Positions 16,107 through 61,382 are shown, counted from the stretch's first letter. The stretch: 64,000 nt of DNA from Macrostomum lignano (GCA_002269645.1 NIVC01001097.1:124001-188000), one strand, 5' to 3'. A program made the numbers and translations. The notes: generated by a model not told the origin, from the sequence alone.

Positions 16107-16739
16107 ATGCCAGAGGAAGCAGAAACCATGCCTAAACCGCATATCTATGTGGAGAGAACATTGGCTGTGATTAAACCAGATGCTGTGCATCATGCTGACG
16201 AAATCGAGGACATTATTACTCAAAATGGATTCTCTGTTCTGCAGAAACGGAAGGTGCAACTCACGCCAGAACAAGCCAGTGAATTATATTCCGAGCACTT
16301 CGGAAAAATGTTTTTTCCCAGTTTGATTACGTATATGAGCAGCGGGCCAATCGTTGCCTTGGTCATTGCCAAGGACAAAGCTATCAGCAGCTGGAGGGAG
16401 CTCATCGGTCCCACAAACGCTCTGATTGCGAAGCAGTCTCATCCGGATAGCCTTCGAGCCAAGTATGGCACAGATGACCAACAGAATGCTCTACACGGAA
16501 GCGACAGTTTCACGAGTGCGGAAAAGGAAATTCGCTTTTTCTTTCCAGACAGCATTGTGGAGCCGATTTCAATCGGCGATTCTGCCAAGTCCTACCTTGC
16601 CCGGCATGTCAACCCCACCGTGCTCAAGGGACTTACTGAGCTGTGCAAGAAAAAGCCCAATGATCCAATTGTGTGGCTATCTAATTGGCTACTAGAAAAC
16701 AACCCAAATAAACCAAAGGTTTGTAGTCATTTGATATGA
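16107..16739 (+). CDS. NME5: Nucleoside diphosphate kinase homolog 5 (radial-spoke protein RSPH23) with C-terminal Dpy-30 motif; intronless
   Basis: ERTLAVIKPDAV, YMSSGPIVAL, SLRAKYGTDDQQNALHGSDS (His retained), YLARHVNPTVLKGLTELCKKKPNDPIVWLSNWLLENNPNKP (Dpy-30); 210 aa. Confidence 0.96.
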   Translation: MPEEAETMPKPHIYVERTLAVIKPDAVHHADEIEDIITQNGFSVLQKRKVQLTPEQASELYSEHFGKMFFPSLITYMSSGPIVALVIAKDKAISSWRELIGPTNALIAKQSHPDSLRAKYGTDDQQNALHGSDSFTSAEKEIRFFFPDSIVEPISIGDSAKSYLARHVNPTVLKGLTELCKKKPNDPIVWLSNWLLENNPNKPKVCSHLI

Positions 16740-35355: not shown

Positions 35356-38300
35356 TTAGAAGCTTTCCAGAAAATCCAGCCAGTTGTTCTTCACCCCGGA
35401 TGGCCTCAGCCGGAGCACCAGTTTCCTGATCTCGTCGTACATGAGGATGAGGAAGCCGAAGGGCATTGCGGGCAGCCACCAGGTGAAGCGGAGCGGCTGC
35501 ATCTGCAGGGCCTGGTTCAGGTAGGGCACGTAGACCATCACGATGGCCAGGCCGGTCTCAAACAGCAGCGAGAAGGACAGGAAATGATTCCACATGCCCT
35601 GCTGCAGCAGCGAGTTGCTGCGGGTCTTGCAGGCCAGGAGATTGGCCCACTGCATCACCACAATGCTGGCAAAGAAAGCCGAGTGAGCTGTGTACTCCAG
35701 GCGCTTGCGCTGGTAATAGGACTGCGGGCAGAGCGCAGGGGCTTTGTTTGAGCTTGGATTCTTTTTTTAATACTTCCGGAAAGGTGATAAATTTGGTTAC
35801 AATTTGGTTACAGTTCGCATAGCTGCAGATTCCTACCTTTGGTCCAATGCTTACCCTAAATCTACTCCCGGTTCTTTGTAGTTTCCTGCTTCCACTTTGA
35901 TGTAGTTTCCTACTTCCGGCCCCATGTAGTTTCCTACTTCCGGTTCCATGTAGTTTCCTACTTCCGGTACCATGTAGTTTCCTACTTCCGGTCCCATATA
36001 GTTTCCTACTTCCGGTCCCATAAAGTTTCCTACTTCCGGTCCCATATAGTTTCCTACTTCCGGTCCCATGTAGTTTCCTAATTCGGGTTCTATGTAGTTT
36101 CCTGCTTCCGGTTTCATATAGTTTCCTACTTCCGCTTCCATATAGTTTCCTACTTCCGGTCCCATATAGTTTCCTACTTCCGGTTCTATATAGTTACCTA
36201 TTTCCGGTTGCATATAGTTTTGTGCTTCCGGTTCTGTATAGATGTAGGTGTATATTTTCCAACTTACGGCTCTGTATTTCCCCACTTTCAGCAAAAATTT
36301 CTATCAAAACTGCCTTGTTTCTATTGAGCCTATTGAAAATCCTTAGCCACTTCACACGTACTTAGGGGGTTCAGCAGGTCACTTCCGGTTAGCCTACTTC
36401 ACGGCCGCACTCACCCACTCCTGGCCGTAGCTGTCCTCCAGGTCCACGATGCCCTCGCTGTCCCACACCCGGCGGATGCCGAACAGCCGGCGCGGCCAAA
36501 AGCCGTTCTCGGACAGCACGACGAAGTAGGTGAAGAAGCCGCCGGCCGCCTGCAAGATGCCGATGCGGGCGAAGGCCGAGCTGAGCAGCCGCTCGCTCAC
36601 TAGGCGGTCCCGGCGCGGATTCCTGGGATCGCGGCGCATGATGTCGCTTTCAGCCTCCTCGTAGGCCAGGGAGACGGCCGGGGCCAGGTCTGTGCCGAGG
36701 TCGATGCACAAGATGGTGATAGTGCCCAGGGGCAGCGGGATGCTGACCACCAGGAAGGACAGGAAGCAGATGACCTCGGGCATGTTGGAGGTCAGCGTGT
36801 AGGCGATGGACTTCTTGAGGTTGTCGAACAGGATGCGGCCCTCCTCGATGCCCGTGACGATGGAGGCGAAGTTGTCGTCCGCCAGCACCATGTCGGCGAC
36901 CTGCGGCGGCGGTTGGTATAAACGGCTGAGGCTCAGATCCCCAATCCCTTGACAGGCTCAGATCCCCAATCCCCTGACAGGCTCAGATCCCCAATCCCCT
37001 GACATGCTCAGATCCCAAATCCCCTGACATGCTCAGATCCCCAATCCCCTGACAGGCTCAGATCCCCAATCCCCTGACATGCTCAGATCCCAAATCCAAT
37101 GACAGGCTCAGATCCCAAATCTCCTGACAGGCTCAGATCCCCAATCCTCTGAAGGCTCAGATCCCAAATCTCCTGACAGGCTCAGATCCCCAATCCTCTG
37201 AAGGCTCAGATCCCCAATCCCCTGACAGGCTCAGATCCCCAATCCCATGACAGGCTCAAATCCCCAATCCCCTTACAGGCTCAGATCCCAAATCTTGACA
37301 GGCTCAGATCCCCAATCCCGACAGGCTCAGATCCCCAATCCCCTGACAGGCTCAGATCCCCAATCTCCTGTCAGGCTCAGATCCCCAATCCCCCGACAGG
37401 CTCAGATCCCCAATCCCCTGACAGGCTCACCTGCTTGCTGATGTCGCTGCCCGCCAGGCCCATGGCGATGCCGATGTCCGCCTGCCTGAGCGCCGGCGAG
37501 TCGCTCACGCCGTCGCCAGTGACCGCCACCACGTGACCCAGGCGCTGGCAGCTCTCCACAATGACCAGCTTCTGCTGCGGGGTGGTCCTGGCGAACACGA
37601 GCTCCCGGTGAGTGCGCACCAGCTCGTCCAGCTGGCCGCTGGTCATCTCGGCCAGGTCGGAGCCGTGCACCACGCAGGCGTCGGCCTCCCGCGGGTCCAC
37701 GTGGGACGGGTCGACGCCGCGCTCCAGTGCGATGTCCTCCGCCGTCTTGCTGCGGCTGCTGATGATGTCCACGTGGCGGGCGATGGCCTTCGCCGTGATT
37801 GGGTGGTCGCCCGTCACCATGATGACCTGGAAAGGTGGCGGTGAGATTCGGGTGGGCAGTGGCTGAGATTTGGGTGGGCAGTGACTGAGATTCGGGTGAG
37901 ACAGTGGCTGAGATTCGGATGGGTAGAGACTGAGATTCGGGTGAGACAGTGGCTGAGATTCGGGTGGGCAGTGGCTGAGATTCGGGTGAGCAGTGGCTGA
38001 GATTCGGGTGGGCAGTTACTAAGATTCGGGTGAGACAGTAGCTGAGATTCGGGTGAGACAGTGACTGAGATTCGGGTGGGCAGTGACTGAGATTCGGGTG
38101 GGCAGTGACTGAGATTCGGGTGGGCAGTGACTGAGATTCGGGTGGGCAGTGGCTGAGATTCGGGTGAGACAGTAGCTGAGATTCGGATGAGACAGTGGCT
38201 GAGATTCGGGTGAGACAGTGGCTGAGATTCGGGTGGGCAGTGACTGAGATTCGGGTGGGCAGTGGCTGAGATTCAGGTGGGCAGTGGCTGAGATTCGGGT

Positions 38301-41300
38301 GAGACAGTAGCTGAGATTCGGATGAGACAGTGGCTGAGATTCGGGTGAGACAGTGGCTGAGATTCGGGTGGGCAGTGACTGAGATTCGGGTGAGACAGTG
38401 GCTGAGATTCGGATGAGACAGTGGCTGAGATTCAGGTGGGCAGTAGCTGAGATTAAGGTGGGCAGTGGCTGAGATTCGGGTGGGCAGTGACTGAGATTCG
38501 GTGAGACAGTGGCTGAGATTCGGATGAGACAGTGGCTGAGATTCGGGTGAGACAGTGGTTGAGATTCAGGTGGGCAGTAGCTGAGATTAAGGTGGGCAGT
38601 AGCTGAGATTCGGATGAGACAGTGGCTGAGATTCGGGTGAGACAGTGGCTGAGATTCAGGTGGGCAGTAGCTGAGATTCGGGTGAGACAGTGGCTGAGAT
38701 TCGGGTGAGACAGTGGCTGAGATTCGGATGATACAGTGGCTGAGATTCGGGTGAGACAGTGGCTGAGATTCGGATGAGACAGTGGCTGAGATTCGGGTGA
38801 GACAGTAGCTGAAATTCGGATGAGACAGTGGCTGAGATTCGGGTGAGACAGTGGCTGAGATTCGGGTGAGACAGTGGCTGACATTCGGGTGGACAGTAGC
38901 TGAGACTCGCGAGATTCGCGAAAAGCTAGCACACGCTAGCAACTGCCTACTTATAAGTAGCAAAACACGAGCACGAACAGAAAAGTTCATCCCTGCGCTC
39001 TCCCAGCTCCTCACCTTGATTCCTGCGGAGCGGCACTTCTGCACGGCGTCCGGCACGGAAGCCCTGGGCGGGTCAATCATGGAGATGAGGCCGAGAAACC
39101 GGAGCCCCATGAGCGGGAAGTTCACCTCCTCGGCGTTGAACTCGTATCGCTCGTCGAATTCGTCGGCGGACAGGCGGAGGTCGCAGAAGCCGAGGACCCG
39201 CTCGCCCTGGCCGCCCAGCTCGTTGTAGGCGGCGAGAAAGGAGCGGCGCCACTGGTCGGAGGTCTGCACCTCGCGGCCGTCAACCAGCAGGTGCGAGCAT
39301 CTGTCAAATATGATCTCCGGAGCGCCCTTCATCACCAGTAGGAAGTTGGAGCCGCGCTCCCGCATCACGTGCACGGAGGCCTGGGGCGAGGCGGAGGGGT
39401 GAAGAGGCACTTCCGGTGAATATTCTTGCTTAGAGTGAAAAGGCAATATTAAGTCACTTCCAATCCAATATTCTAGTCACTTCCGGTTTAGAGGGAAAAG
39501 GCAATCCAATAGTCTAGTCACTTCCGGTTTGGAGGGAAAAGGCAATCCAATAGTCTAGTCACTTCCGGTTTGGAGGGAAAAGGCAATCCAATAGTCTAGT
39601 CACTTCCGGTTTAGAGGGAAAAGACAATCCAATAGTCTAGTCACTTCCGGTTTGGAGGGAAAAGGCAATCCAATAGTCTAGTCACTTCCCGCCTCACCTG
39701 GAATTTGTTGGCGCTGCTGAACGGAACCTCGCAAATCTTGGGATGTTGGCGCCGGAACTCCGGCACGCCGCCCACGCACCACTCCATGTACTTGAGCAGC
39801 GCGGACTCGGAAGCGTCGCCAATGCAGTCCCGCTGCAGAATCGGCTTTTCCTCTTCGCCGGCTTTGAACTCCGCCCGGCTGCACAGCATGGCGCACCGGC
39901 TGAGGGCTACCCAGTCAGGGGACTGCGGAGGCGCCGGGGCCGCGCCTTCGCCCATCTGGACCTCCGCGATGCGGCCGCTCTGCCAGGTGTGCGTCACCGT
40001 CATCCGGTTCATTGTCAGCGTGCCTGGCGGGGGCGGCATGTGGTTTTTTAGTTGAACTCAAGTCTGTTGCTAGGCAGTTGCTATGTGGTTTTTTAGGTGA
40101 ACTCAAGTCTGTTACTAGGCAGTTGCTATGTGGTTTTTTAGGTGAACTCAAGTCTGTTGCTAGGCATTTACTATGTGGTTTTTAGGTGAACTCAAGTCTG
40201 TTGCTAGGCGGTTGCTACGCGGTTTTACACCCTCAATAGTCTAGCAATCCCGTTCGCCATCGCTCCCACGCCAGACTCACCGGTCTTGTCCGAGCAGATG
40301 ACGCTGGTGGCGCCCAGAGTTTCCACAGCCTCCAGGTTGCGGACGAAGCAGTTCTTCGAGGCCATGCGCTGGGCGGTGAGGGTCAGGCAGACGGTGACGG
40401 TGGCCAGGAGGCCCTCCGGGATGTTGGCCACGATGATGCCGATGAGGAAGATGATGGAGTCCAGCCAGTCGTACTGCATAGCGAAGGAGGCGATGAAGAA
40501 GGCGGCGCCCATCAGCACGGCGATGACGGTGACGATGTTGATGAAGCGCTCGATTTCCCGGCCGATGGGGGTCTGGCGGGCGTCCAGCCCGGAGGCCAAG
40601 TTGGCGATGCGCCCGATGAGGGTGGCGTCACCAGTGCGGATCACAATGCCGATGCAGTTGCCTGGTGGGGGTGGTGAAATTCCAGCTCAGGCTCATGTGC
40701 TCAATCGCAGCGGGTCTGAAGACAGTGGGATAAAATCCCCATCTCAGGTGCCTCTCTCCCTGAAGCCAGTGGGATAAAATCCCCATCTCAGGTGCACACT
40801 CCCTGAAGCCAGTGGGATAAAATTCCCATCTCAGGTGCTCACTCCCTGAAGCCAGTGGGATAAAATTCCCATCTCAGGTGCTCACTCCCTGAAGCCAGTG
40901 GGATAAAATTCCCATCTCAGGTGCTCACTCCCTGAAGCCAGTGGGATAAAATTCCCATCTCAGGTGCTCACTCTCTGAAGCCAGTGGGATAAAATTCCCA
41001 TCTCAGGTGCTCACTCCCTGAAGCCAGTGGGATAAAATCCCCATCTCAGGTGCACACTCCCTGAAGCCAGTGGGATAAAATTCCCATCTCAGGTGCACAC
41101 TCCCTGAAGCCAGTGGGATGAAATCCCCATTTCAGATGCTCACTCCCAGCGGGTTTGACGCCACAAAGGATAAAATCCCCATTCTTGGGCACTTACCCTC
41201 AACAGCGTAGGTAGAGAAGAACGCCAGGTTCTCTGTCTCCAGCGGGTTCTCGCTGGTGTACTCCCTGGAGCGCACCTGGGGATCGGACTCGCCAGTCAGA

Positions 41301-49239: not shown

Positions 49240-49590
49240 CCAGCTCTTGTCCACCTGGAGATCCCCGAGCCTCCACAGCTCTTGTCCACCTGGAGATCCC
49301 CGAGCCTCCACAGCTCTTGTCCACCTGGAGATCCCCGAGCCTCCACAGCTCTTGTCCACCTGGAGATCCCCGAGCCTCCACAGCTCTTGTCAATCTGGAG
49401 ATCCCGGCCTCCACAGCTCTTGTCCACCTGGAGATCCCCGAGCCTCCACAGCTCTTGTCCACCTGGAGATCCCCGAGCCTCCACAGCTCTTGTCAATCTG
49501 GAGATCCCGGCCTCCACAGCTCTTGTCCATCTGGAGATCCCCGAGCCTCCACAGCTCTTGTCCACCTGGAGATCCCCGAGCCTCCACAGC
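49240..49590. repeat. 35-bp minisatellite
   Basis: Unit cacagctcttgtccacctggagatccccgagcctc. Confidence 0.92.
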
Positions 49591-50230: not shown

Positions 50231-53200
50231 CTACTTGGTCTCTTTCTTCTCTTTCTTCTCTTTCTTCTCTTTCTTCTCTTTCTTTTCTTTCTTCTCTTTC
50301 TTCTCTTTCTTCTCTTTCTTTTCTTTCTTCTCTTTCTTCCCTTTCTTCTCTTTCTTCTCTTTCTTCTCTTTCTTCTCTTTCTTGCCTTTCTTCTCTTTCT
50401 TTTCTTTCTTCTCTTTCTTCTCTTTCTTCCCTTTCTTCTCTTTCTTCTCTTTCTTCTCCTTATCGCCCTTCTCGCCCTTCTTCTTGGCCTTGGGCGCCTT
50501 GGAAATCTTGTCGTCAGACAGTTTGATCTCCTTCTGGGCCTGGGCGATCCTGCCATTGACCTTGGCCAGACGCCGTTTCAAGATGTCCTTGTCACTCCTG
50601 CGAGAGAAGTAAGCGATGTAGCTGATGTGCCTGGACACCTTCTCGGCAGTCTCAAGGAGGTCCTTGAAATCTTCGATGCACTTCTCGGCGAGCTTCTGGT
50701 CTCGCTTGGCCCGGGCCTTGTTGGAGGCGACAATGAGCTTGTCGGTCATGCTGTCGGCTTTGCTGGTGGCCTTCTTCAGCTTGACCGCTTCCTTGTCGGC
50801 GAGTTTTCGCGCGTCCTTGCGGCGGATGCGCGGCACGGAGTCGGAGGCCGAGCGGACCAGGCGGCGCAGTGGCCGCATGATGCTCAGGACGATGTCTGAC
50901 ACCTCGGAGGCCTGGCGGACAACCTCCAGCGAGGCTGCGAGAATTTGGTAGTCGGGTTACGTTGGGTTAGGCTTGTAATCTTGCCTGTGTTTAGTGACAG
51001 GGCAGCCGATGGCTTGTAATCTTGCCTGTGTTTAGTGACAGGGCAGCCGATGGCTTGTAATCTTGCCTGTGTTTAGTGACAGGGCAGCCGATGGCTTGTA
51101 ATCTTGCCTGTGTTTAGTGACACGGCAGCCGATGGCTTGTAATCTTGCCTGTGTTTAGTGACAGGGCAGCCGATGGCTTGTAATCTTGCCTGTGTTTAGT
51201 GACAGGGCAGCCGATGGCTTGTAATCTTGCCTGTGTTTAGTGACAGGGCAGCCGATGGCTTGTAATCTTGCCTGTGTTTAGTGACAGGGCAGCCGATGGC
51301 TTGTAATCTTGCCTGTGTTTAGTGACAGGGCAGCCGATGGCTTGTAATCTTGCCTGTGTTTAGTGACAGGGCAGCCGATGGCTTGTAATCTTGCCTGTGT
51401 TTAGTGACACGGCAGCCGATGGCTTGTAATCTTGCCTATGTTTAGTGACACGGCAGCCGATGGCTTGTAATCTTGCCTGTGTTTAGTGACAGGGCAGCCG
51501 ATGGCTTGTAATCTTGCCTGTGTTTAGTGACAGGGCAGCCGATGGCTTGTAATCTTGCCTGTGTTTAGTGACAGGGCAGCCGATGGCTTGTAATCTTGCC
51601 TGTGTTTAGTGACACGGCAGCCGATGGCTTGTAATCTTGCCTGTGTTTAGTGACACGGCAGCCGATAATTTGTACGCAATGAACCTACTATTTGATACGC
51701 TCACGGATCGATAGATTCCAGCTTACGGTATGACATGATTTGTGCGCAATGAACCTACTATTTGATACGCTCACGGATCGATAGATTCCAGCTTACGGTA
51801 TGACATGATTTGTGCGCAATGAACCTACTATTTGATACGCTCACGGATCGATAGATTCCAGCTTACCGTATGGCATGATTTGTGCGCAATGAACCTACTA
51901 TTTGATACGCTCACGGATCGATGGAGTCCAGCTTACCGTATGGCATGATTTGTGCGCAATGAACCTACTATTTGATAAGCTCACGGATCGATAGATTCCA
52001 GCTTACCGTATGGCAGAGTGGAGAAGCTGGATGAGTCAATCTTCAGTTTGGTTTTTCCAACCTTCAGCTTCAATTCCTCCTCTTCCACCAGCGACTTGAG
52101 CTTCTCGATCTTGCTGCTGCGCACCAGGCCGGAGACGAGCAGCTTTCGGGACACGTACAGCTTGCGGATGGTGTAGGGGTGAATCCGCAGCGCCTTGGCA
52201 AGACCGTTCCTCACGGCGCTCAAGAATTTGCTCTTCTGCTTCTGAGAGTCGCCAACAGTGGAAACGTATGAGCCCTTGACGGTGAACTCGAACTGAGCCA
52301 GGTCCTTGGCTGCAGGGGTTTGAAATGGATATTTAAGAAGAACCCTGTCGGTTTTAACTTGTTTTGAGCAAGGAAATCATAAACATTGACTTACGATCAA
52401 CCTTCTTGAAGCCCATCTCTTCCCAGTTGATCTCGACGTTTCGCGACAGCAGATCCCGGATCTTGTCTGCAATTGGTTGTTCAGTTGTAAAGTCCGTTGT
52501 TTGGTCATTATCACCAGAATGAGTAGAAAACCGAGCACTTACTGGTATATTTCGCCTTCATCGAAACCTTGTTAACTTTTCCAACTCTGCAGGTGGCAGA
52601 GATGATGTCATCTACGAACTGCGGCTCGACCAGCTCGCTGAATGTGCTTGTCTTGAAGCTGTGGATGCCGTGGGGCGCCGTTGCAATGCTGTCGAGCTGC
52701 TTTGCCTGGATGTCATCGCCAACTCCGACGGTGATGATTCGGCAGCCCAAGGCTTTGACCTTCGCGGCCTCCTTGATCGGGTCGACCTTGCTGTTGGAGG
52801 CTCCGTCGGTAACCAGAATGACGACACTCTCGGCGCCCTTGCTCTCGCCACCCCGATAGCCGTTGACCTTGTTGAGCAGAAAGCGGCGGAAGGCCTTGAT
52901 GGCGTCTCCGGTGTAGGTGGAGCCTGGAGAATACGCCATCTCCATCACTCGAGTGGTCATGGAGTCCAGGTGGTAGTGGGCGACGTAGTTGAAGATCACC
53001 TTCATTCTCTGCACACTGGAGAACTTGAGCAGAGCCACGTGCGTGTTGTCGCGAGAAACGTCCAGCTTCTTTGCTACGGCAACAATGAAGCGCCGAATGT
53101 GCTCGAAGTTCCTGCCGCGAACGGAGTCAGAGGAGTCGATTAGGAAAGCGACGTCCATGCGCTTGCTGCAGGTGCGCTTGCACTTGGCCGATCCCGTCCA

Positions 53201-56200
53201 CAGAATGTCATCGCACTGGTTGCGGCTGTTGACTCGCTGGGTGTACACCTTGATTGGCACAATCTTGCCATTGCAATGGCCAGTTTCCACCGCCGGCTTG
53301 GGGCAAGAGCAGCGGATCTCCTTGGTGCGTCTGCGTTGGATGCAGCCGCGAGTGAGGCGGTTGAACTCGTAGAAGGTCTCATACATGATCTTGAAGTTGT
53401 TCACACACGGCAGGTATTTGCGGGTGGGCTTTGGGCAGGCTGAAATGCATTCATCAGTGATAGTTTTTTCATTCGACAAGACGGAATGCCATAAGTTGTT
53501 TAAAAACTTACCGCATCTCGCAGTCTTTGTCTTAGTCACTGCTTTGCAATGACCGCCAGATTCGCCACCACTGATCAGCTTGTACTGCAGAATGGTGGTC
53601 TTCCTGTACTGATTCTCGCATTTGCCAATGGTTTTCTTCGGACCGGGGCAGCCACAGCGGACTTTACTGTCCTTGGAGGAGCTTTCGCAAATGCCCTTCT
53701 TTTTATTTAACTTGTAGTAGGTAGTCGTAATTTTTTTAAACATTTTTTCGCACGGACCCGCCTTTGTGTCCGGCTTCGGACACGCGCAGCGCACCTTCTT
53801 AAAGTCCTGCTTCACAACCTTCTTGCAGCCGTAGCCCTTGGGTACGTACTCAACCCGGTGGATGGATTTGTAGTTGCCGACGCAGTCGCCATTGATTAAA
53901 TACGGGTGCGGGCACACTGCAATTTCGGGCAATACAGAGTTAAGCACGCTGGGTTATTAGCTTGAGTAATCCATCAAAGACACTCACGTGGCCTCTCGCA
54001 GTGGAAGGTGAGAACTCGGGCAACCAGGCCGTGGATGTCCTGGAACTCGCGCAGGCCGAAGATGAACACGCGGCCCTCGGGTCCGGCCAGCTTGGCCAGC
54101 TGGGCCCTGTTCCGCTTGGACTGCTCGCCCATGGCGATCGTGACGAAGAAAACGCCAGACCGCCTGACCAGCTTGGACTCGTAGAACTGGTCAACCTCGC
54201 CGTTGGAGTCGGCACCGTCCGTGAGCAGGATGGTGACGTGAGGCACGTCCTCTCGCATGCCGGCGTGCTTCTGCCACATCTTGGTGCGCACCTCGTGCAG
54301 TGCCTCGCCGAGGAAGGTGAGACCGGGCTCGTACTGCATGGCCTCGATCTTCTTCAGGATCTCCTCGTGCGAGTTGTGCTCCCAGCTGTCCAGGTCCATG
54401 ACAATTTTGTTCTTGTGGCTAAAGCGCATCACGCCGATTCGCTGGCGCTCGCCGTTCTTCATGTAGAACTGCTGGACAACGTCGCGAACGAAGTTCTTCA
54501 TGATGTAGAAGTTGTGCTCGGTCACGGTCAGGGACGAGTCCAGCATGAAGATCACGTCGGCCTTCTGAATGCAGACTGAGAATTTTGAGAGAGTTTACCT
54601 TAGATGGATTCTTGCTTGAAAATTGAAAGGAGAAAATGTGCGCTTATTTTCTAGCATAGCCTTGCATCCGCGCCAGTTACTCACTGGGAACGTTCGGGCA
54701 GTCACTGGGGTGCACGCATTTGCCCTTGTGCAGCAGGAAGTACGGCCGGCACTCGCACTGCGGCCGTCGCTCCTTGGGGCACTTGCTGAACAGCACGGGC
54801 TCGTTGCAGGTCCTGGGGCAGCCGGAGCCGCGCACTCGGAAATACTGGTGCCCGGGGCAGGGCGTGGGTTCGTTGCACTTGCCCTTGTAGTAGTACTTCT
54901 TGCCGGTGCACACTGCGGGTAGGCAATGCGGCAGAAAGAAATTCGTCGGGCTTCAAATATTTGCCCGAATTCCACTTGTGTGGATATGAGCTCCACTATT
55001 CATTAAATCTGAAAAAGAGGGTTCTGACACTACTGGGAAGAACTAGTTTGCTTCGGATCCTTACTCTTCACGCAGCGGCCATCCTTGGTCTTCTTGAAGC
55101 CGGGGTCGCAGCCGACTTTGTAACATTTTCGGTCAGAGCGCAGCTTGTAGCCCTTCGGGCACTTTATGGCTGAAATTCGAGAAGTGAAATTCTCGTGAGC
55201 GCTTATGGCTTATCCCAGCTGAGTCTCACCACCTGCACTGGGCCCGCCTGCCTACCTTTCTTGCAGATGTCTCGGAACAGGATCTGGCCTGGAGGGCAGT
55301 ACTTGCGCACCTTCGGCATGCATTTGCCATCGAAGAATTCCGTTTTGGGCGGACAGTCGACTGAATGTTTTTTTTACAGTGGGCGGAGGAATTAAGAAGG
55401 GAATGGAAAAACTGATTGGCATGGATGCGAAGTCAGGCAATCAATTTAATTGAATTCAGTTTAATGCAACAGAATATTTTAAATGTGTTCTGCGAAAAAG
55501 GATTGCAATGATAAATAAAATCTCTGCTTTGCACTGCACTGTGGCAACAAGGCGGATTAAGTTGGGCTACATTTTCTTGAATTGAAAGCAAAGCAGATGC
55601 TGGAACTGCACTGTGAGCAATGGAGTAGCAAAAGGTAGGATTTCGCTTTATTATTGGGGAATACGGCCGCAAGGGGAGATCAATTCGCCTCACCTTTTCT
55701 GCAGGTGCAGGTGGCTTTGTTCAGCGCCAGGCCTTTGCGGCAGCGCATTTTGCATTCGCACCGGCAGTCGCTCTTCTGGTCAAAGTTTCGGCCCGGGCAC
55801 TTCTTCTTGCACTCTACAAGTCAATTAGACAGTTTTGGTGGAGCACTGGAGCTTGATTCAGTCAAGGGGATTTGGGATTAACTTCTTGCGCAAGGCAAGG
55901 TTTTGGAACTCAATATTTACCACAGGCACAGAGCTTAGCGTTGAGTTTCTTTTCTCCTTTGCAGGATTTCTTGCAGACCTTGGCCTTCTTGGGCTTCGAG
56001 GGCACGTGTCGGGGCACGCAGACGCAGCCCTTGACGAGGATCTCCGACTCCTTGCAGCTCTTCCTGCAGTCATCGCTGACGGACACGTTGGGGACGCACT
56101 TGCACGGGACCACCAGCATAAAGCCCTTGGGGCATTTCAGGCTGCACTTGGGTTTCACTGGAATTGAGGGAGCAAAATTCATACTGCTCATGCTGCTCAA

Positions 56201-58562
56201 AGCAAAATACGCGCTGCTCAGTGCTCAAACGACGCTTCTGACTCACATGGGACGCACTCTCGGGCGATCATCTGCAGTCCCTTGCCGCAGGACTTGAAGT
56301 CTTTAACCGAGGCAGCCTTGCCGCCTTCGCACAGGATGTCGGTGATAACCTTGCCGACTTTGCCGAGGTCTTCGAAATCGTTGACAACCGTGACGTACTT
56401 CTTATTGCTGGCCAGCTTCTCCAGGGCGCTCCTGGAGATGCCGGTGCCGATGCCGAGCGCCAAGACGGAGGCGCCCATCTTGCGTAGCTTGTTGGACTCG
56501 GCAACGGGGTTGGCGCGGCCGTTGGCGCGACCGTCGGTAAGAAGCACCACCACCGGCTTGGCCTCGGGGCGGTGGCCGTTCGCCTTCTGGAAGCCCTGCT
56601 CGCGGATCAGCTGGAAAGCCTCACCGGTGACGGTCTTGCCGGATTTGTACCTGAATTTTGCCAGGTAGTTCGTGTGCGACCAATTCGGCATTGGTGAAGT
56701 ACTGGGAGGCTGAATGAGCAACTTTTCCATTTTCAGAGGGTCGCTAATCAAGCTCTAACAGCTTCTTAGTTCACAGCTCAAAAAGCAGACGGTAACCTAT
56801 TTGTAGCTTCTCATGTTGCGAGCGTGCAATGCAAGCCTCGGGCATCTGCCCTCTTTTTATACTAAGGTGTCTGTCTGCTTGTGGTGGTAGGCAGGAGGCA
56901 CAGCTAGACTCAGAGGCTTACTCAAGGTCGTGCAGCAGGAACTGCAGCATGGCCTTGCGTTCCGCGGGCTTTCTCATGGAGTAGTCCTTCAGCTTGATGA
57001 CCATGTCCGCCTTGTCCGAGAAGATCACGACGCCGAAGCGGAAGTTGCTGGATTTGCGCAGCAGTTTGGAGACGATCTCGTGAATGAATTTCGTCACCAC
57101 AGCGAAGTTCCTCCGGCCGACGGAGTGGGACGAGTCCAGTGCGAAGAAAATGTCCGCCTTTTGGCTGCAGCCTGGATTGCGTGGTGGGGCCGGCGTGATT
57201 GTTCTGGGATTTGCAGCAGAGTTCAAAGCGAAAGCCGGCAAGCAGGCAGACAGTCGGACCGGGCCCGGGGCTTGGGGCTTTCCCAGGGATTGACTGGCCA
57301 GGAGGCAATGCCAGAAAGATTAAAAGCAGGCTTTGGCGACGATGCAAAAGCAAGGAAGAATTCCCCAAAGGTTTTTAATTAGTAGTTTATAATGTACTGT
57401 TTAAGGTTGAAAATAACGCTTGGGTCGCAGTAGTGCTCGTATTAAGTCTTGTTTACACTTTTGTCAACAGATGTTTCCTTTAGTGTAGAGGCCTGAACTA
57501 CTTGCAGTAGTGTGGTTCAAAGATGAATTTAAATTAACGAATTACCACGAGAAATTCTAGGCAGTGCATGTACCGAGTTTTTTACATAATTTTGCGACAC
57601 TTACGTAATGCTGAATTTTTTTTGCAAAAAAGTTGAAGATGCATTGTTAGAGACAGTCAATAATTTTGGGGTTTCACATCGCACAGACAGACAGGTAGGT
57701 GCCTAGCACATTGTCTATGGCTCTGATGGATAGGTAGTGTCTAGCACACTGTCTATGGCTCTGATGGATAGGTAGTGTCTAGCACACTGTCTATGGCTCT
57801 GATGGACAGGTGGTGTCTAGCACACTGTCTATGGCTCTGATGGATAGGTAGTGTCTAGCACACTGTCTATGGCTCTGATGGATAGGTAGTGTCTAGCACA
57901 CTGTCTATGGCTCTGATGGACAGGTAGTGTCTAGCACACTGTCTATGGCTCTGATGGACAGGTGGTGTCTAGCACACTGTCTATGGCTCTGATGGACAGG
58001 TGGTGTCTAGCACACTGTCTATGGATCTGATGGACAGGTAGCAGTTTAAACGTCCCTGCATTGGAAATTGTTAGTTGCATCCTGAGTCCTTTCAGCGGCT
58101 CCCTGAGGCGAACTCATAGATACGAGCTAAGCGTACAAGGATAGGAAAAGCGGAAGCGACAAGCGGAGCATGCAACCAGGTTGGACCGCTGCAGCGCAGT
58201 TGCAGACCGGTCATTGAAAGCAATAGCAAATTTCTGCACAAATAAAAATATCGGTACTTACTTTTACCTGAGAATTGAGGTGGTATGCACGTAGTTAGGC
58301 GTGTTATAAGTGTGTCAATAGTCAGGTTAATTAGTCAAAATGGCAAAAACCAAGGCGTGACTGAGAAGGGCCACTGACTCAATTTCTGTTCTAGTGCAGA
58401 CTTTGTGAGGCTGTAGGCCTTCGGAAAGCCGAGTGGCTACTCACCATCCTTGCTGATCTCAGTCAGCGTGCTGAGCACATCGCTGTCAGCGGCTGCAACA
58501 TTGCCTTGGAGCACCAGCGGCAGCAGCAGCAGCGCCGGGAACAGTGACATCAGGCGCCGCAT
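50231..58562 (-). CDS. Large secreted multidomain protein (~1511 aa): SP-VWA1-CXCXC/Cys-rich-TIL-VWA2-5x Cys repeats-VWA3-SEA-like-helical-KEK tail; 14 exons
   Basis: Exons 58562-58445, 57171-56922, 56650-56247, 56157-55921, 55813-55694, 55360-55256, 55169-55065, 54912-54685, 54575-53988, 53916-53512, 53439-52543, 52466-52395, 52309-52007, 50934-50231. All GT/AG; phase 1 except one phase 2; 4536 nt in total. Signal MRRLMSLFPALLLLPLVLQGNVAA; VWA motifs ADIFFALDSSHS..LLTDG, ADVIFMLDSSLT..LLTDG, MDVAFLIDSSDS..LVTDG. Confidence 0.85.
50970..51665. repeat. 41-bp intronic minisatellite
   Basis: Unit ggcttgtaatcttgcctgtgtttagtgacagggcagccgat. Confidence 0.95.
51670..52015. repeat. 70-bp tandem repeat that copies an exon end plus its 5' splice site
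   Basis: GCTTAC (GTAAGC on the minus strand) at 51721, 51791, 51861, 51931, 52001. Confidence 0.92.
57690..58040. repeat. 38-bp intronic minisatellite
   Basis: Unit ggtagtgtctagcacactgtctatggctctgatggata. Confidence 0.93.
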
Positions 58563-59173: not shown

Positions 59174-59804
59174 TCTACTCGGGGCTCCTCAACTTCAACG
59201 TCGCGGACAGCAACGCGCATCCCATAAAGTCTGCTGTGGCAGGATCGATCGATCCGGGATAGTGGGGGAGGGTGCTGGAGTTGCTGGTGCAGCGCTGAAG
59301 GTGGGGCTGACTGGCTCGCATTCTTGCCGCTCTGCGTGTGGCACTCACAAGGCGCTGTTTGCGTCTAATCGCAACTCTCTGCTGCCCGAGACATATTTGG
59401 GAGCGAAGGGGGGCAGCAGCGGGGAGACTCGGCCGATCTGTCGTGACTAAGCAGCAGTGCTGAGTTGGGCCCGAGCTCGCACAATGGCTTCTCTCCGCGG
59501 CAGTTTCAGTCACCCGTAGATGCAGAAGCAGAAGCACTGAGCATACAGTAGCAGTCACTCTCAAATTGCGGAGAGCAAAGAAACTGCTATGCAGCTTTGG
59601 GAAGCACGTTTGCATAGTGCAGTACTGTTTCCGTATACATTCTCTCGAATAAAATATCAGATTGGTATCAGATAGTCATCAATGTGTTAGAACTTATTCG
59701 ATTGATTATTGCTAATTAACAATCTTAATAAATGCACTCGATCCGTGGGTCACAGGCCCCCGCCTGTGAATTGTTAGTTGCAGGGGCGTCACCTCTGCCT
59801 GAGT

Positions 59805-60560
59805 GCCTGTGGCGCCAAAATGAGTACCTGCCTACGGCGCCAAAATGAGTGCCTGCCTACGGCGCCAAAATGAGTACCTGCGGCGCCAAGATGAGTGCCT
59901 GCCTACGGCGCCAAAATGAGTACCTGCGGCGCCAAGATGAGTGCCTGCCTACGGCGCCAAAATGAGTGCCTGCCTACGGCGCCAAAATAAGTACCTGCGG
60001 CGCCAAGATGGGTGCCTGCCTGCGGCGCCAAGATGAGTGCCTGCCTGCGGCGCCAAGATGAGTGCCTGCCTGCGGCGCCAAGATGAGTGCCTGCCTGCGG
60101 CGCCAAGATGAGTGCCTGCCTGCGGCGCCAAGATGAGTGCCTGCCTGCGGCGCCAAGATGAGTGCCTGCCTGCGGCGCCAAGATGAGTGCCTGCCTGCGG
60201 CGCCAAGATGAGTGCCTGCCTGCGGCGCCAAGATGAGTGCCTGCCTGCGGCGCCAAGATGAGTGCCTGCGGCGCCAAGATGAGTGCCTGCGGCGCCAAGA
60301 TGAGTGCCTGCGGCGCCAAGATGAGTGCTTGCGGCGCCAAGATGAGTGCCTGCGGCGCCAAGATGAGTGCCTGCGGCGCCAAGATGAGTGCCTGCCTGCG
60401 GCGCCAAGATGAGTGCCTGCCTGCGGCGCCAAGATGAGTGCCTGCGGCGCCAAGATGAGTACCTGCCTGCGGCGCCAAGATGAGTACCTGCCTGCGGCGC
60501 CAAGATGAGTACCTGCCTGCGGCGCCAAGATGAGTACCTGCCTGCGGCGCCAAGATGAGT
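59805..60560. repeat. 25/21-bp minisatellite (gcggcgccaagatgagtgcct[gcct])
   Basis: Direct reading. Confidence 0.94.
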
Positions 60561-61382
60561 GCTAACAACAGCGATTGCCAAAATAATGTAAGGAATTCAG
60601 CTCAGCAGAATTCTTGGCTCTGTAACCTCACTATAAAATCTATGGCGACGCCCCCAATCAATTGGGGCTGCTGGACGAGCGAAGAGTGCCATGCAGAATA
60701 ACAGAATTAGAGCTCAGTGATAAAAAATAAAGTCAATACTATTTATTAAAATATACTTGCTATCGGACTGACTGTACTCAAAGATAAAAAATTGTAAATA
60801 ATGGAACACCTTAAAAGTTTAAGCCAAAACTTCAGCCAACATGGTAAATATTAACACACTTCAGCCAATCAAAAGTATCTACAGTAATCTTTTTTCTTTT
60901 GAATGCTTTCATTTTTTAACTTGCTGCTTGAAAATAAATTAAGAGAGTTTCCAAAGGACTTTACTGACAGTAGCAGTAAACGATTTTGCGTTAAACATTA
61001 TTAAAACTTTTTCACGCGATATAAACGATTGTGTAAAATGAATTTTAACATTATGTGTTACGTCTAAAGAAGTAGTTGAACAAATGAAATTTATTAAGCA
61101 AAAATGAAAACTATACTGGTTTATGCTGTACTACTGGGAAATACATTTATTCTCCTGATATGTTGATTGACAGAATAAAATATCAGACGAATAATATGTT
61201 GCCAAGCGCAATGTATAATTATATAAAGATGAGTCCAGGAACAGTATTACTTTATTATTTTTGAAATTGGCTCAGCACTTGCAATGGTATCCCCATGTTG
61301 AGTGTACATGCACATACTCGTAGATCGCATCCGTTCCTGACTGCGCCCTTTGTCAGTGACGTCACGGCGTGATTGCGACACA

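What the first reader, a model, noticed from the sequence alone, without database searches (positions are those of the whole stretch)
50231..58562. Unusual ~1500-aa secreted VWA mosaic protein: adhesive, mucus or matrix candidate
Seen: signal peptide, three VWA domains (MIDAS DxSxS intact in 1 and 3, DSSLT in 2), CXCXC-like repeats, TIL, five Cys repeats, a SEA-like alpha/beta region, a helical region and a highly charged Lys-rich tail; no TM helix. Nearly all introns are phase 1 (exon shuffling). Known: flatworm adhesive and mucus proteins combine vWF-type, TIL and Lys/Arg-rich regions. I do not recognise this architecture.
Basis: partly seen in the sequence, partly recalled or inferred. Interest (0 to 1): 0.75.

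Follow-up and report, generated by a model that had tools for sequence, protein, structure and literature searches.

The report
Secreted three-VWA flatworm matrix-type protein
This is an intact gene of the flatworm Macrostomum lignano for a large, secreted, very basic protein built from three von Willebrand A domains, cysteine-rich spacers and a lysine-rich tail; it belongs to a small, uncharacterised family seen so far in flatworms, and it probably cross-links extracellular material, though no tissue or function has been shown.

Summary
A 14-exon gene lies on the minus strand from the ATG at 58562 to the stop at 50231 and encodes 1511 aa. In order it has a signal peptide, VWA1, a Cys-rich region, TIL, VWA2, five 4-Cys repeats, VWA3, a ferredoxin-like alpha/beta domain, four long helices and a 71-aa KEKK tail. 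There is no TM helix, and 12 of 13 introns are phase 1.

The organism is Macrostomum lignano. The locus is already deposited, but only as fragmentary or mis-modelled 'VWFA domain-containing' or hypothetical proteins (A0A1I8IU13, A0A1I8HJC7, BOX15_Mlig011403g1). A 54%-identical, collinear paralog exists (Mlig006812g1-3). Collinear homologs occur in the monogenean Cichlidogyrus casuarinus and in two single-contig assemblies from unidentified organisms, so the exons form one transcript.

The VWA domains are of the collagen VI / matrilin / mussel PTMP1 type. The five-repeat rod, the alpha/beta domain and the helical region match no Pfam family, PDB sequence or PDB fold significantly. A polycationic C-terminal tail recurs across the family.

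The protein is not like the known flatworm glues Mlig-ap1 and Mlig-ap2, which use vWD-C8-TIL, and it is not a mucin. The best reading is a multivalent extracellular cross-linker. The tissue is unknown, because I found no expression data. I rate it a new variant of a known kind, of moderate interest.

The parts
50231..58562 (-). Whole coding gene, ATG to stop. It has 14 exons: 58562-58445, 57171-56922, 56650-56247, 56157-55921, 55813-55694, 55360-55256, 55169-55065, 54912-54685, 54575-53988, 53916-53512, 53439-52543, 52466-52395, 52309-52007 and 50934-50231. The CDS is 4536 nt and the product is 1511 aa.
   Evidence: built the model. All introns are GT-AG. Intron lengths are 1273, 271, 89, 107, 333, 86, 152, 109, 71, 72, 76, 85 and 1072 nt. 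The junctions agree with P0029, P0001, P0030 and P0002.
58491..58562 (-). Signal peptide (aa 1-24: MRRLMSLFPALLLLPLVLQGNVAA).
   Evidence: Read directly from the sequence: a basic n-region, a Leu-rich core and a small-residue c-region. It is identical in BOX15_Mlig011403g1. The paralog has an equivalent signal peptide.
56344..57163 (-). VWA1 (aa 43-225). MIDAS elements are DSSHS, GKT and TDG. The flanking Cys41 and Cys230 may pair. The domain is split by the gene's only phase-2 intron.
   Evidence: Pfam VWA. The best PDB relatives are collagen VI alpha3 (2e-71) and mussel PTMP1 (1e-49).
55066..56331 (-). Cys-rich region 1 (aa 230-446, 32 Cys). It holds five C-x3-C-x(9-12)-C-x-C units, two of them literal C-x-C-x-C, followed by two 35-aa 4-Cys modules that each occupy their own phase 1-1 exon.
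   Evidence: There is no Pfam match except a sub-threshold GBP_PSP hit. The region is conserved in P0002, P0035, P0181 and P0054.
54686..55065 (-). TIL domain (aa 447-522, 10 Cys), encoded by a single phase 1-1 exon.
   Evidence: Pfam PF01826, E=4e-6, 27.3 bits against a cutoff of 24.5. Pfam also reports TIL in all four homologs that cover this region; P0181 scores just under the cutoff, at 23.0 bits.
53998..54573 (-). VWA2 (aa 524-715), encoded by a single exon. MIDAS elements are DSSLT, GLT and TDG. The flanking Cys524 and Cys715 may pair.
   Evidence: Pfam. The homologs have DSSVS or DSSST at the same place. Integrin alpha-X and alpha-M I domains are the best PDB matches for this domain.
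53180..53914 (-). Five tandem 4-Cys repeats of the form C-P-x-P..C..C..C (aa 720-762, 764-806, 808-853, 855-897, 899-940), joined by one-residue linkers. The 72-nt intron at 53511-53440 falls within this stretch.
   Evidence: The AF2 model has mean pLDDT 85.4 and is all-beta, with three long strands per unit. There is no Pfam hit, no PDB sequence hit and no Foldseek PDB hit below E=0.1. An HMM of the unit hits only family members among the 195 fetched proteins.
52589..53170 (-). VWA3 (aa 944-1137). MIDAS elements are DSSDS, GST and TDG. The flanking Cys944 and Cys1137 may pair.
   Evidence: This is the best-scoring Pfam VWA stretch.
52008..52543 (-). A linker helix (the 72-nt exon 52466-52395) followed by a ferredoxin-like beta-alpha-beta-beta-alpha-beta domain (aa 1153-1277).
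   Evidence: AF2 pLDDT is about 75-87. Foldseek aligns 98 columns to the mouse SorCS2 ectodomain at rmsd 2.7 A and prob 1.0, but with E=0.2. Other hits are RRM-like or ferredoxin-like folds, and no SEA entry appears in the top 50. There is no Pfam hit.
50492..52007 (-). Four helices of about 35 residues (aa 1278-1425), carrying one lone Cys (C1363). The stretch spans intron 13; nearly all of the coding sequence is in exon 14 (50934-50492).
   Evidence: AF2 helices have pLDDT 82-92 and the model has pTM 0.61. The nearest folds are designed four-helix bundles, at sub-significant scores. The region aligns with the paralog, including the Cys.
50234..50491 (-). Polycationic tail (aa 1426-1511). Its last 71 residues are K47 E20 G3 T1, as KEKK/GKK repeats, followed by the stop at 50233-50231.
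   Evidence: At the DNA level it is a period-9 array of 24.4 copies at 50239-50458. AF2 predicts disorder for the start of the tail that was modelled. Tails of different sequence but similar charge (+14 to +22 over the last 60 aa) occur in P0002, P0035 and P0181.

Best explanation
The gene encodes a secreted, disulfide-rich, elongated protein that most likely cross-links extracellular material.

What the sequence shows:
- It has a signal peptide and no membrane anchor.
- It has three A-domains of the collagen VI / matrilin type. Each is closed by an N/C-terminal Cys pair and keeps the metal-site residues.

What I infer:
- Each A-domain binds a protein ligand through its metal site. The ligand could be a fibrillar or network matrix component, or another copy of the protein.
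- The Cys-rich region 1, the TIL domain and the five-unit beta-repeat rod act as stiff spacers that hold the three binding domains apart.
- The C-terminal ferredoxin-like domain and helical module, with the polycationic tail, attach the molecule to polyanions such as sulfated or acidic glycans, or drive self-association.

The net effect would be a multivalent adaptor that ties matrix or secreted material together, working like matrilins, collagen VI N-terminal arrays or mussel PTMP1 without belonging to those families.

I favour a body matrix role (basal lamina or parenchymal matrix). The tissue has not been determined.
For: - The gene model is intact and all introns are GT-AG.
- Pfam finds three VWA domains and one TIL.
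- The closest solved relatives of the VWA domains are collagen VI alpha3 (2e-71) and the collagen-binding byssal matrix protein PTMP1 (1e-49). The closest named proteins outside the family are collagen VI chains and matrilin-2.
- MIDAS residues are present in all three domains, read directly from the sequence.
- There is no TM helix, there are 68 Cys, and pI is 9.8.
- The repeat region is confidently predicted as an all-beta array of three-stranded units.
- The family is old and stable. The paralog is collinear at 54% identity. Collinear homologs at 29-38% identity occur in a monogenean and in two single-contig transcript assemblies. The repeat units correspond position by position across species.
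- Every full-length member ends in a tail carrying +14 to +22 net charge over its last 60 residues.
- Modules sit on symmetric phase 1-1 exons, as is usual for metazoan extracellular mosaic proteins.
Against: - I obtained no expression, localisation or binding data. The gene identifiers appear in no searchable paper text or held supplement.
- The choice of body matrix over gland secretion rests only on the type of VWA domain and on conservation in a parasitic flatworm.
- The very basic composition and Cys richness are also typical of secreted glues and egg-shell or cement materials.
- The helical region is predicted as four helices and showed no match to the matrilin coiled-coil family, so oligomerisation is unproven.
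- The KEKK tail is a simple DNA repeat that is open in all three frames of that strand. One deposited model splices it out. Its presence in the mature protein is therefore inferred.
Confidence: 0.5

Rival explanations
1. It is a gland product released outside the body. It could be a component of the duo-gland adhesive, the cement or shell-gland secretion that glues and hardens eggs, rhabdite or mucus material, or seminal fluid. The Lys-rich tail and Cys-rich modules would provide cohesion, and the VWA domains would provide cross-linking.
For: - The composition is basic (pI 9.8, 15.5% Lys) with a polycationic tail. This resembles in kind the Lys/Arg-rich cohesive regions of Mlig-ap1 (PMC6410801).
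- A TIL domain and dense Cys are present.
- A strong VWA relative, PTMP1, is a holdfast protein.
- M. lignano does express a giant VWA-annotated transcript, RNA815_13, specifically in egg-shell or cement glands (PMC4490696), so such proteins are used in its glands.
- Macrostomids and monogeneans both have adhesive glands (my own knowledge).
Against: - There is no vWD, C8, lectin, EGF or TSP1 domain and no long low-complexity region of the kind that defines the known flatworm adhesives.
- The ten transcripts found in M. lignano adhesive organs all belonged to ap1 or ap2 (PMC6410801).
- There is no mucin-type PTS region and only one N-glycosylation sequon.
- RNA815_13 is a different gene.
- Sequence strings from this gene are absent from the held supplements of the seminal-fluid screen.
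Confidence: 0.3
2. It is a humoral defence or wound-sealing factor. In this reading it is a secreted multivalent binder that aggregates or clots at wounds or on microbes, in the manner of clotting proteins. The TIL domain would inhibit proteases and the cationic tail would bind microbial surfaces.
For: A TIL domain is present. One homolog ends in a Lys/Ala-rich, potentially amphipathic tail, read directly from the P0181 sequence. MIDAS-bearing VWA domains are present.
Against: No lectin, complement-type, vWD or protease domains are present. Nothing specific points to this reading, and there are no expression data.
Confidence: 0.08
3. It is a gene-model artefact or a dead copy: the exons belong to two or more transcripts, or this locus is a pseudogene.
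For: - Deposited models disagree with one another. P0001 has a wrong N-terminus and stops in intron 13. P0030 splices out the tail. BOX15_Mlig011403g1 is frameshifted in TIL.
- The donor of exon 13 is repeated inside a 70-bp tandem array, so truncated isoforms are conceivable.
Against: - The window copy has an uninterrupted 4536-nt CDS with 13 GT-AG introns.
- Every junction is supported by at least one deposited protein.
- The paralog model is collinear from the signal peptide to the helical region.
- Two homologs are each encoded by one continuous ORF on a single transcript-like contig that runs from Cys-rich region 1 to the basic tail.
Confidence: 0.04

Closest known systems
Matrilins (especially matrilin-2) and AMACO/VWA2
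   Same: They are secreted proteins in which MIDAS-type VWA domains are separated by Cys-rich spacer modules and followed by a C-terminal helical region. Matrilin-2 is the commonest named hit outside the family, and one monogenean homolog is auto-annotated 'Matrilin 2'. The proposed adaptor or cross-linker mechanism is the same.
   Different: The spacers are not EGF domains and there is no hit to the matrilin coiled-coil family. This protein has three VWA domains, a TIL domain, a five-unit 4-Cys beta-repeat, a ferredoxin-like domain and a polycationic tail, none of which matrilins have.
Collagen VI alpha3-type N-terminal VWA arrays
   Same: It is the best PDB sequence relative of the VWA domains (2e-71). 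Collagen VI chains are also the top non-family hits. Both arrange VWA domains like beads on a string.
   Different: No collagen triple-helix region was detected. The VWA domains are separated by long Cys-rich modules rather than packed in tandem.
PTMP1, proximal thread matrix protein 1 of the mussel byssus (PDB 4cn8)
   Same: It is the second-best solved relative (1e-49, two stretches). It is a secreted invertebrate protein made of VWA domains, and it is deposited as a matrix protein of an extracorporeal holdfast.
   Different: PTMP1 is a chain of 454 residues with two matching VWA stretches. No other part of this protein matches it.
Macrostomum lignano adhesive proteins Mlig-ap1 and Mlig-ap2, and Tmed-ap1, -ap2 and -ap3
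   Same: They come from the same animal or phylum, are secreted, are Cys-rich, contain TIL, and have strongly cationic Lys/Arg-rich regions (PMC6410801, PMC9229212).
   Different: Those proteins are 1,687 to 14,794 aa long (Mlig-ap1 5,407; Mlig-ap2 14,794; Tmed-ap1 1,687; Tmed-ap2 7,228; Tmed-ap3 3,700). They are built on vWD-C8-TIL, C-type lectin, EGF and TSP1 domains and on repeat regions of hundreds to thousands of residues. None has a VWA domain. This protein has no vWD or C8.
RNA815_13, the egg-shell/cement-gland transcript of M. lignano (Arbore et al. 2015, PMC4490696)
   Same: It is from the same species and its BLAST annotation is to VWA or collagen VII/VI-like flatworm proteins. It shows that VWA-annotated giant secretory proteins are made in Macrostomum glands.
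   Different: It is a different gene. The transcript is 16,136 nt, its product begins MGWSPSL..., and neither its primers nor its 5' end occur in the window.

Membership tests
Uncharacterised flatworm VWA-TIL-VWA-repeat-VWA family (Mlig011403, Mlig006812, Cichlidogyrus KAL3315888/7, P0035, P0181) | Collinear alignment across Cys-rich region 1, TIL, VWA, the CPxP 4-Cys repeats, VWA, the alpha/beta domain and a basic tail. | tested here: met
   The model is about 97% identical to P0001 and 54% identical to P0002 over the full length. P0035 and P0039 each align in one long stretch, and P0054 in a main stretch spanning query 4-450; identities are 32-38%. See also the alignment and the repeat HMM.
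Matrilin | One or two VWA domains with MIDAS. | tested here: met
   Pfam VWA three times. DxSxS/T, GxT and TDG are read from the sequence.
Matrilin | EGF-like repeats between the VWA domains. | tested here: not met
   There is no EGF-family Pfam hit in the whole protein or in the isolated Cys-rich region, even at E<=10.
Matrilin | C-terminal coiled-coil oligomerisation domain (Matrilin_ccoil). | tested here: not met
   The Pfam hits on the helical region at E<=10 do not include it. AF2 gives four helices of about 35 residues. Oligomeric state was not testable.
Collagen VI-type chain | A collagen triple-helical Gly-X-Y region next to the VWA arrays. | tested here: not met
   There is no Collagen Pfam hit, and no Gly-X-Y run is visible in the sequence.
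Flatworm adhesive proteins (ap1/ap2 type) | A vWD-C8-TIL core, with lectin, EGF or TSP1 domains. | tested here: not met
   Only TIL is present. The domain lists of ap1 and ap2 come from PMC6410801 and PMC9229212.
Flatworm adhesive proteins (ap1/ap2 type) | Expression in adhesive gland cells and presence in footprints. | not testable with these tools
   No expression or proteome data could be linked to this gene.
Gel-forming mucin | vWD assemblies, a Pro/Thr/Ser-rich O-glycosylated region and a C-terminal cystine knot. | tested here: not met
   No such Pfam hits, no PTS-rich stretch, and one N-glycosylation sequon.
SEA domain | Sequence match to the SEA family and a G/SVVV-type autoproteolysis motif in the beta2-beta3 turn. 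| tested here: not met
   There is no Pfam hit at E<=10. The turn reads V-SRKL-L, from the sequence and the secondary structure. No SEA structure is among the top 50 Foldseek hits.
SEA domain | Ferredoxin-like beta-alpha-beta-beta-alpha-beta fold. | tested here: met
   AF2 topology is E46-54, H65-83, E91-95, E100-106, H107-118 and E124-142. This fold is shared by many unrelated families.
CXCXC repeat (Balbiani ring 3 / VEGF-C C-terminal type) | Repeated C-x10-C-x-C-x-C motif recognised by the Pfam model. | tested here: inconclusive
   Two literal C-x-C-x-C motifs occur with C-x10-C spacing (aa 323-338 and 342-357). The Pfam scan of this region returned only a sub-threshold GBP_PSP hit. The motif is short, and HMMER's filters may drop it.
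TIL domain | A 10-Cys trypsin-inhibitor-like module scoring above the Pfam gathering score. | tested here: met
Pfam also reports it in the homologs; P0181 scores 23.0 bits, just below the cutoff.

The most novel reading that the evidence does not exclude
The family is a previously unrecognised class of flatworm extracellular structural protein. Its five-unit C-P-x-P 4-Cys beta-repeat would be a new fold family. Its conserved polycationic tail would make it a charge-based linker between secreted or matrix material and acidic glycans. One example would be a missing component that couples glue, egg-shell or cuticle-like secretions to the body surface. Such a component would also be relevant to attachment in parasitic monogeneans.
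Probability: 0.2. Interest if true: 0.6.

Novelty: new variant of a known kind. Interest (0 to 1): 0.35.

Why it matters
Multi-VWA proteins organise extracellular matrices and several invertebrate holdfasts. This family adds an architecture that has not been described: three VWA domains spaced by an unclassified beta-repeat rod and ending in a charged tail. It is shared by a free-living model flatworm that can be studied by RNAi and transgenesis and by a parasitic monogenean.

If the protein is a matrix adaptor, it offers a handle on flatworm matrix assembly, which matters for regeneration. If it is a gland product, it would extend the known flatworm adhesive or egg-shell toolkit beyond the vWD-based proteins. 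In either case the corrected full-length gene model improves on the fragmentary deposited ones.

Tried and rejected
- First gene model. It was built from ORFs alone and gave 1561 aa. I rejected two acceptors (57270, 56701) and the intron-retaining read-through of the large ORF after comparison with P0001, P0002 and P0029. I also added a missed 72-nt exon.
- Identity with RNA815_13, the VWA-annotated egg-shell/cement-gland transcript of Arbore 2015. Rejected: it has a different N-terminus, is 16 kb long, and its primers are absent from the window.
- Expression look-ups. I searched by gene identifier or by 18-mers of the CDS in paper text and held supplements. Nothing was found. One orthogroup file was truncated when stored, so absence carries no weight.
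- Word-index homolog searches. The repeat-region alignment did not even return the query's own proteins. The family alignment returned only the two Macrostomum clusters and a collagen VI chain. Both searches were uninformative. The exhaustive HMMER search was the one that found the family.
- Fold searches. The repeat rod gave no PDB hit below E=0.1; SasG G5-E rods appeared only at ranks 28-29. The C-terminal model gave no hit below E=0.001.
- SEA assignment, matrilin membership and mucin membership were all tested and not met (see the membership table).
- Organism of homolog P0035 (run SRR8820788) and of P0181 (JGI 3300078644). Neither was identified.
- A second copy in the window: none.

Full report
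**Observation and gene model**

The interval 50231-58562 is exactly the stop-to-ATG span of one gene on the minus strand. I built a model from open frames and splice signals. I then corrected it against related proteins.

The final model has 14 exons: 58562-58445, 57171-56922, 56650-56247, 56157-55921, 55813-55694, 55360-55256, 55169-55065, 54912-54685, 54575-53988, 53916-53512, 53439-52543, 52466-52395, 52309-52007 and 50934-50231. The CDS is 4536 nt and the product is 1511 aa. All 13 introns are GT-AG. Twelve are phase 1, and the one inside VWA1 is phase 2. Most modules sit on symmetric phase 1-1 exons: two 35-aa Cys modules, TIL and VWA2 each have an exon of their own. This is the usual layout of metazoan extracellular mosaic genes.

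**Organism and deposited versions**

The best database matches are Macrostomum lignano proteins:

| Protein | Accession or name | Length | What it shows |
|---|---|---|---|
| P0001 | A0A1I8IU13 | 1341 aa | Near-identical where it is correctly modelled |
| P0030 | A0A1I8HJC7 | 1470 aa | Same 90%-identity cluster; carries the exon 13-14 junction |
| P0029 | BOX15_Mlig011403g1 | 529 aa | Same 90%-identity cluster; reproduces my signal peptide and first junctions, then frameshifts inside TIL |

A paralog, BOX15_Mlig006812g1-g3 (1621 aa), is 54% identical. It is collinear from the signal peptide into the helical region. The locus is therefore already deposited, but only as fragmentary or mis-modelled 'hypothetical' or 'VWFA domain-containing' proteins. 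No other copy lies in the window.

**One transcript or two**

Several lines support a single transcript:
- Every junction appears in at least one deposited protein.
- The paralog model spans the whole architecture.
- Two distant homologs are each encoded by one uninterrupted ORF on a single transcript-like contig. These are P0035 (a 4842-nt contig from run SRR8820788) and P0181 (a 4154-nt JGI contig). Each ORF runs from the first Cys-rich region to the basic tail.
- The monogenean Cichlidogyrus casuarinus carries the family as two adjacent gene models on one 21.6-kb contig (KAL3315888.1 and KAL3315887.1), probably one split gene.

**Anatomy**

Coordinates of each part are in the parts list.

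- Pfam recognises VWA three times (E=4.7e-98) and TIL (27.3 bits against a cutoff of 24.5), and nothing else. The same holds for the homologs.
- Each VWA domain is bracketed by a Cys pair and keeps the metal-site elements: DSSHS, DSSLT and DSSDS, each with GxT and TDG.
- The mature protein has 68 Cys, pI 9.8 and 15.5% Lys. It has one N-glycosylation sequon, no TM helix and no Pro/Thr/Ser-rich region.
- Cys-rich region 1 consists of five C-x3-C..C-x-C units, two of them literal C-x-C-x-C, followed by two 35-aa 4-Cys modules.
- Between VWA2 and VWA3 lie five units best framed as C-P-x-P..C..C..C: aa 720-762, 764-806, 808-853, 855-897 and 899-940. They are joined by single residues.

**Structure of the five-repeat region**

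I modelled this region with AlphaFold2 on a five-sequence family alignment. Mean pLDDT is 85.4, and the model is all-beta with three long strands per unit.

It has no PDB sequence relative, either with the single sequence or with a profile. It has no Foldseek PDB match below E=0.1. Units also correspond position by position across species. The array is therefore old and stable, not a recent expansion.

**Structure of the C-terminal 300 residues**

The model has pLDDT 80.3 and pTM 0.61. It shows a linker helix, a beta-alpha-beta-beta-alpha-beta domain, four helices of about 35 residues, and a disordered start of the tail.

Foldseek gives only sub-significant hits:
- A 98-column segment of the SorCS2 ectodomain aligns at rmsd 2.7 A and prob 1.0, but with E=0.2.
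- Other hits are ferredoxin-like folds for the first part and designed four-helix bundles for the second part.
- No SEA structure is among the top 50, and there is no G/SVVV motif.

'SEA-like' is therefore a resemblance of topology only.

**The tail**

The last 71 residues are K47 E20 G3 T1. At the DNA level the tail is a period-9 array. All three frames of that strand are open across it, so openness of the frame is not evidence. The reading frame is fixed by the unique upstream part of exon 14. One deposited model splices the repeat out.

What argues for function is that every full-length family member ends in a strongly cationic tail of unrelated sequence, with a net charge of +14 to +22 over the last 60 residues. 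The tail is Arg-rich in the paralog, KAVKK-type in P0181 and KKKPKK-type in P0035.

**Relatives and range**

An exhaustive HMMER search of 1.84 billion representative proteins used the part of the protein after VWA1. Beyond Macrostomum it found only four clusters with long collinear matches (P0035, P0039/P0181, P0054 and P0107). The other entries in the best 150 matched the query only through VWA-sized stretches, often several per protein. The six I looked up are multi-VWA proteins from amphioxus, a shark, a fish (col6a3), Argonauta and Owenia.

All named members are Platyhelminthes. Two members come from unidentified organisms. The closest solved relatives of the VWA domains are collagen VI alpha3 (2e-71) and the mussel byssal matrix protein PTMP1 (1e-49), followed by integrin I domains and apicomplexan TRAP/MIC2.

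**Mechanism**

Secretion, three metal-site A-domains of the matrix type, stiff disulfide-rich spacers and a cationic end are shown or read directly from the sequence. From these I infer a multivalent extracellular cross-linker. The A-domains would bind protein ligands in a cation-dependent way. The Cys-rich modules would space them apart. The C-terminal module and tail would bind polyanions or mediate self-association.

I favour a body-matrix role (confidence 0.5). The reasons are that the VWA domains are of the collagen VI / matrilin type, that the family is conserved between a free-living and a parasitic flatworm, and that nothing matches the defining features of flatworm glues.

The main rival is a gland secretion such as adhesive, cement or egg-shell, rhabdite or seminal material (0.3). 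The basic, Cys-rich composition keeps it alive, as does the fact that M. lignano makes a VWA-annotated giant transcript, RNA815_13, in egg-shell or cement glands (PMC4490696). That transcript is a different gene. The known Macrostomum glue proteins use vWD-C8-TIL with lectin, EGF or TSP1 domains and thousands of low-complexity residues, and they have no VWA (PMC6410801, PMC9229212).

**Comparison and novelty**

It works like matrilins, AMACO, collagen VI N-terminal arrays or PTMP1, but it fails their membership tests: no EGF repeats, no matrilin coiled-coil match and no collagen helix. It is not a mucin and not an ap1/ap2-type adhesive.

I file it as a new variant of a known kind. It is a lineage-restricted multi-VWA mosaic family with an unclassified 4-Cys beta-repeat and a conserved cationic tail. 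It is present in databases but has not been described.

**Limits**

I could link no expression or proteomic data to the gene. The disulfide pattern, the oligomeric state and translation of the tail are inferred. The identities of two homolog-bearing organisms are unknown.

Noticed in passing
window 51668-52015 (minus-strand intron 13 and the last 9 nt of exon 13): A 70-bp tandem array of 5 copies begins inside exon 13. As a result, the exon end plus its GT donor (CCATACG|GTAAGCTGG) recurs at 52013-51994, 51943-51924 (one mismatch) and 51873-51854. Only the first donor keeps the frame. Read-through gives ...TLPYGKLESIDP*, which is the C-terminus of deposited model A0A1I8IU13. A truncated isoform without the helical region and tail is conceivable.
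   Followed up: partly
window 50970-51666, 57690-58041, 49241-49590, 59804-60562: Satellite-like tandem arrays fill the two long introns and both flanks of the gene. They are a 41-bp x17 array (intron 13), a 38-bp x9 array (intron 1), a 35-bp x10 array just downstream of the stop, and a 25-bp x32 array upstream of the ATG. One deposited model (A0A1I8HJC7) reads into the downstream array as coding sequence.
   Followed up: no
window 50239-50458: The KEKK tail is encoded by a period-9 DNA array of 24.4 copies at 93% match. The opposite strand reads as poly-(FFS), and the other two frames of the coding strand read as RKRRK and EEREE, all of them open. Repeat length may differ between genomic copies.
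   Followed up: partly
BOX15_Mlig011403g1 (P0029), another deposited copy of this locus: This 529-aa model is identical to the window protein up to the middle of TIL, then shifts frame (…RGSGCPGPATSPCC…). It is either an assembly indel or a disrupted allele or homeolog. The window copy is intact.
   Followed up: partly
window 16107-16739 (+): An ORF of 210 aa has a nucleoside diphosphate kinase domain (E=2e-44) followed by a Dpy-30 motif (E=1e-15). It looks like an NME5-type gene and is unrelated to the finding.
   Followed up: no
window 38019-39446 (-): A long ORF of 475 aa has a short match to the P-type cation-transport ATPase family (E=9e-5). It is probably an exon of a neighbouring ATPase gene.
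   Followed up: no
window 10556-11776 (both strands): Overlapping long ORFs lie on both strands. One has a sub-threshold Cornifin/SPRR-like low-complexity match, which suggests a repetitive or low-complexity coding or satellite region.
   Followed up: no
Homologs P0035 (L001) and P0181 (L002): These two family members lack VWA1. After the signal peptide they begin with a Cys/Lys-rich stretch instead, while the monogenean homolog keeps VWA1. The family therefore exists in two-VWA and three-VWA forms.
   Followed up: partly
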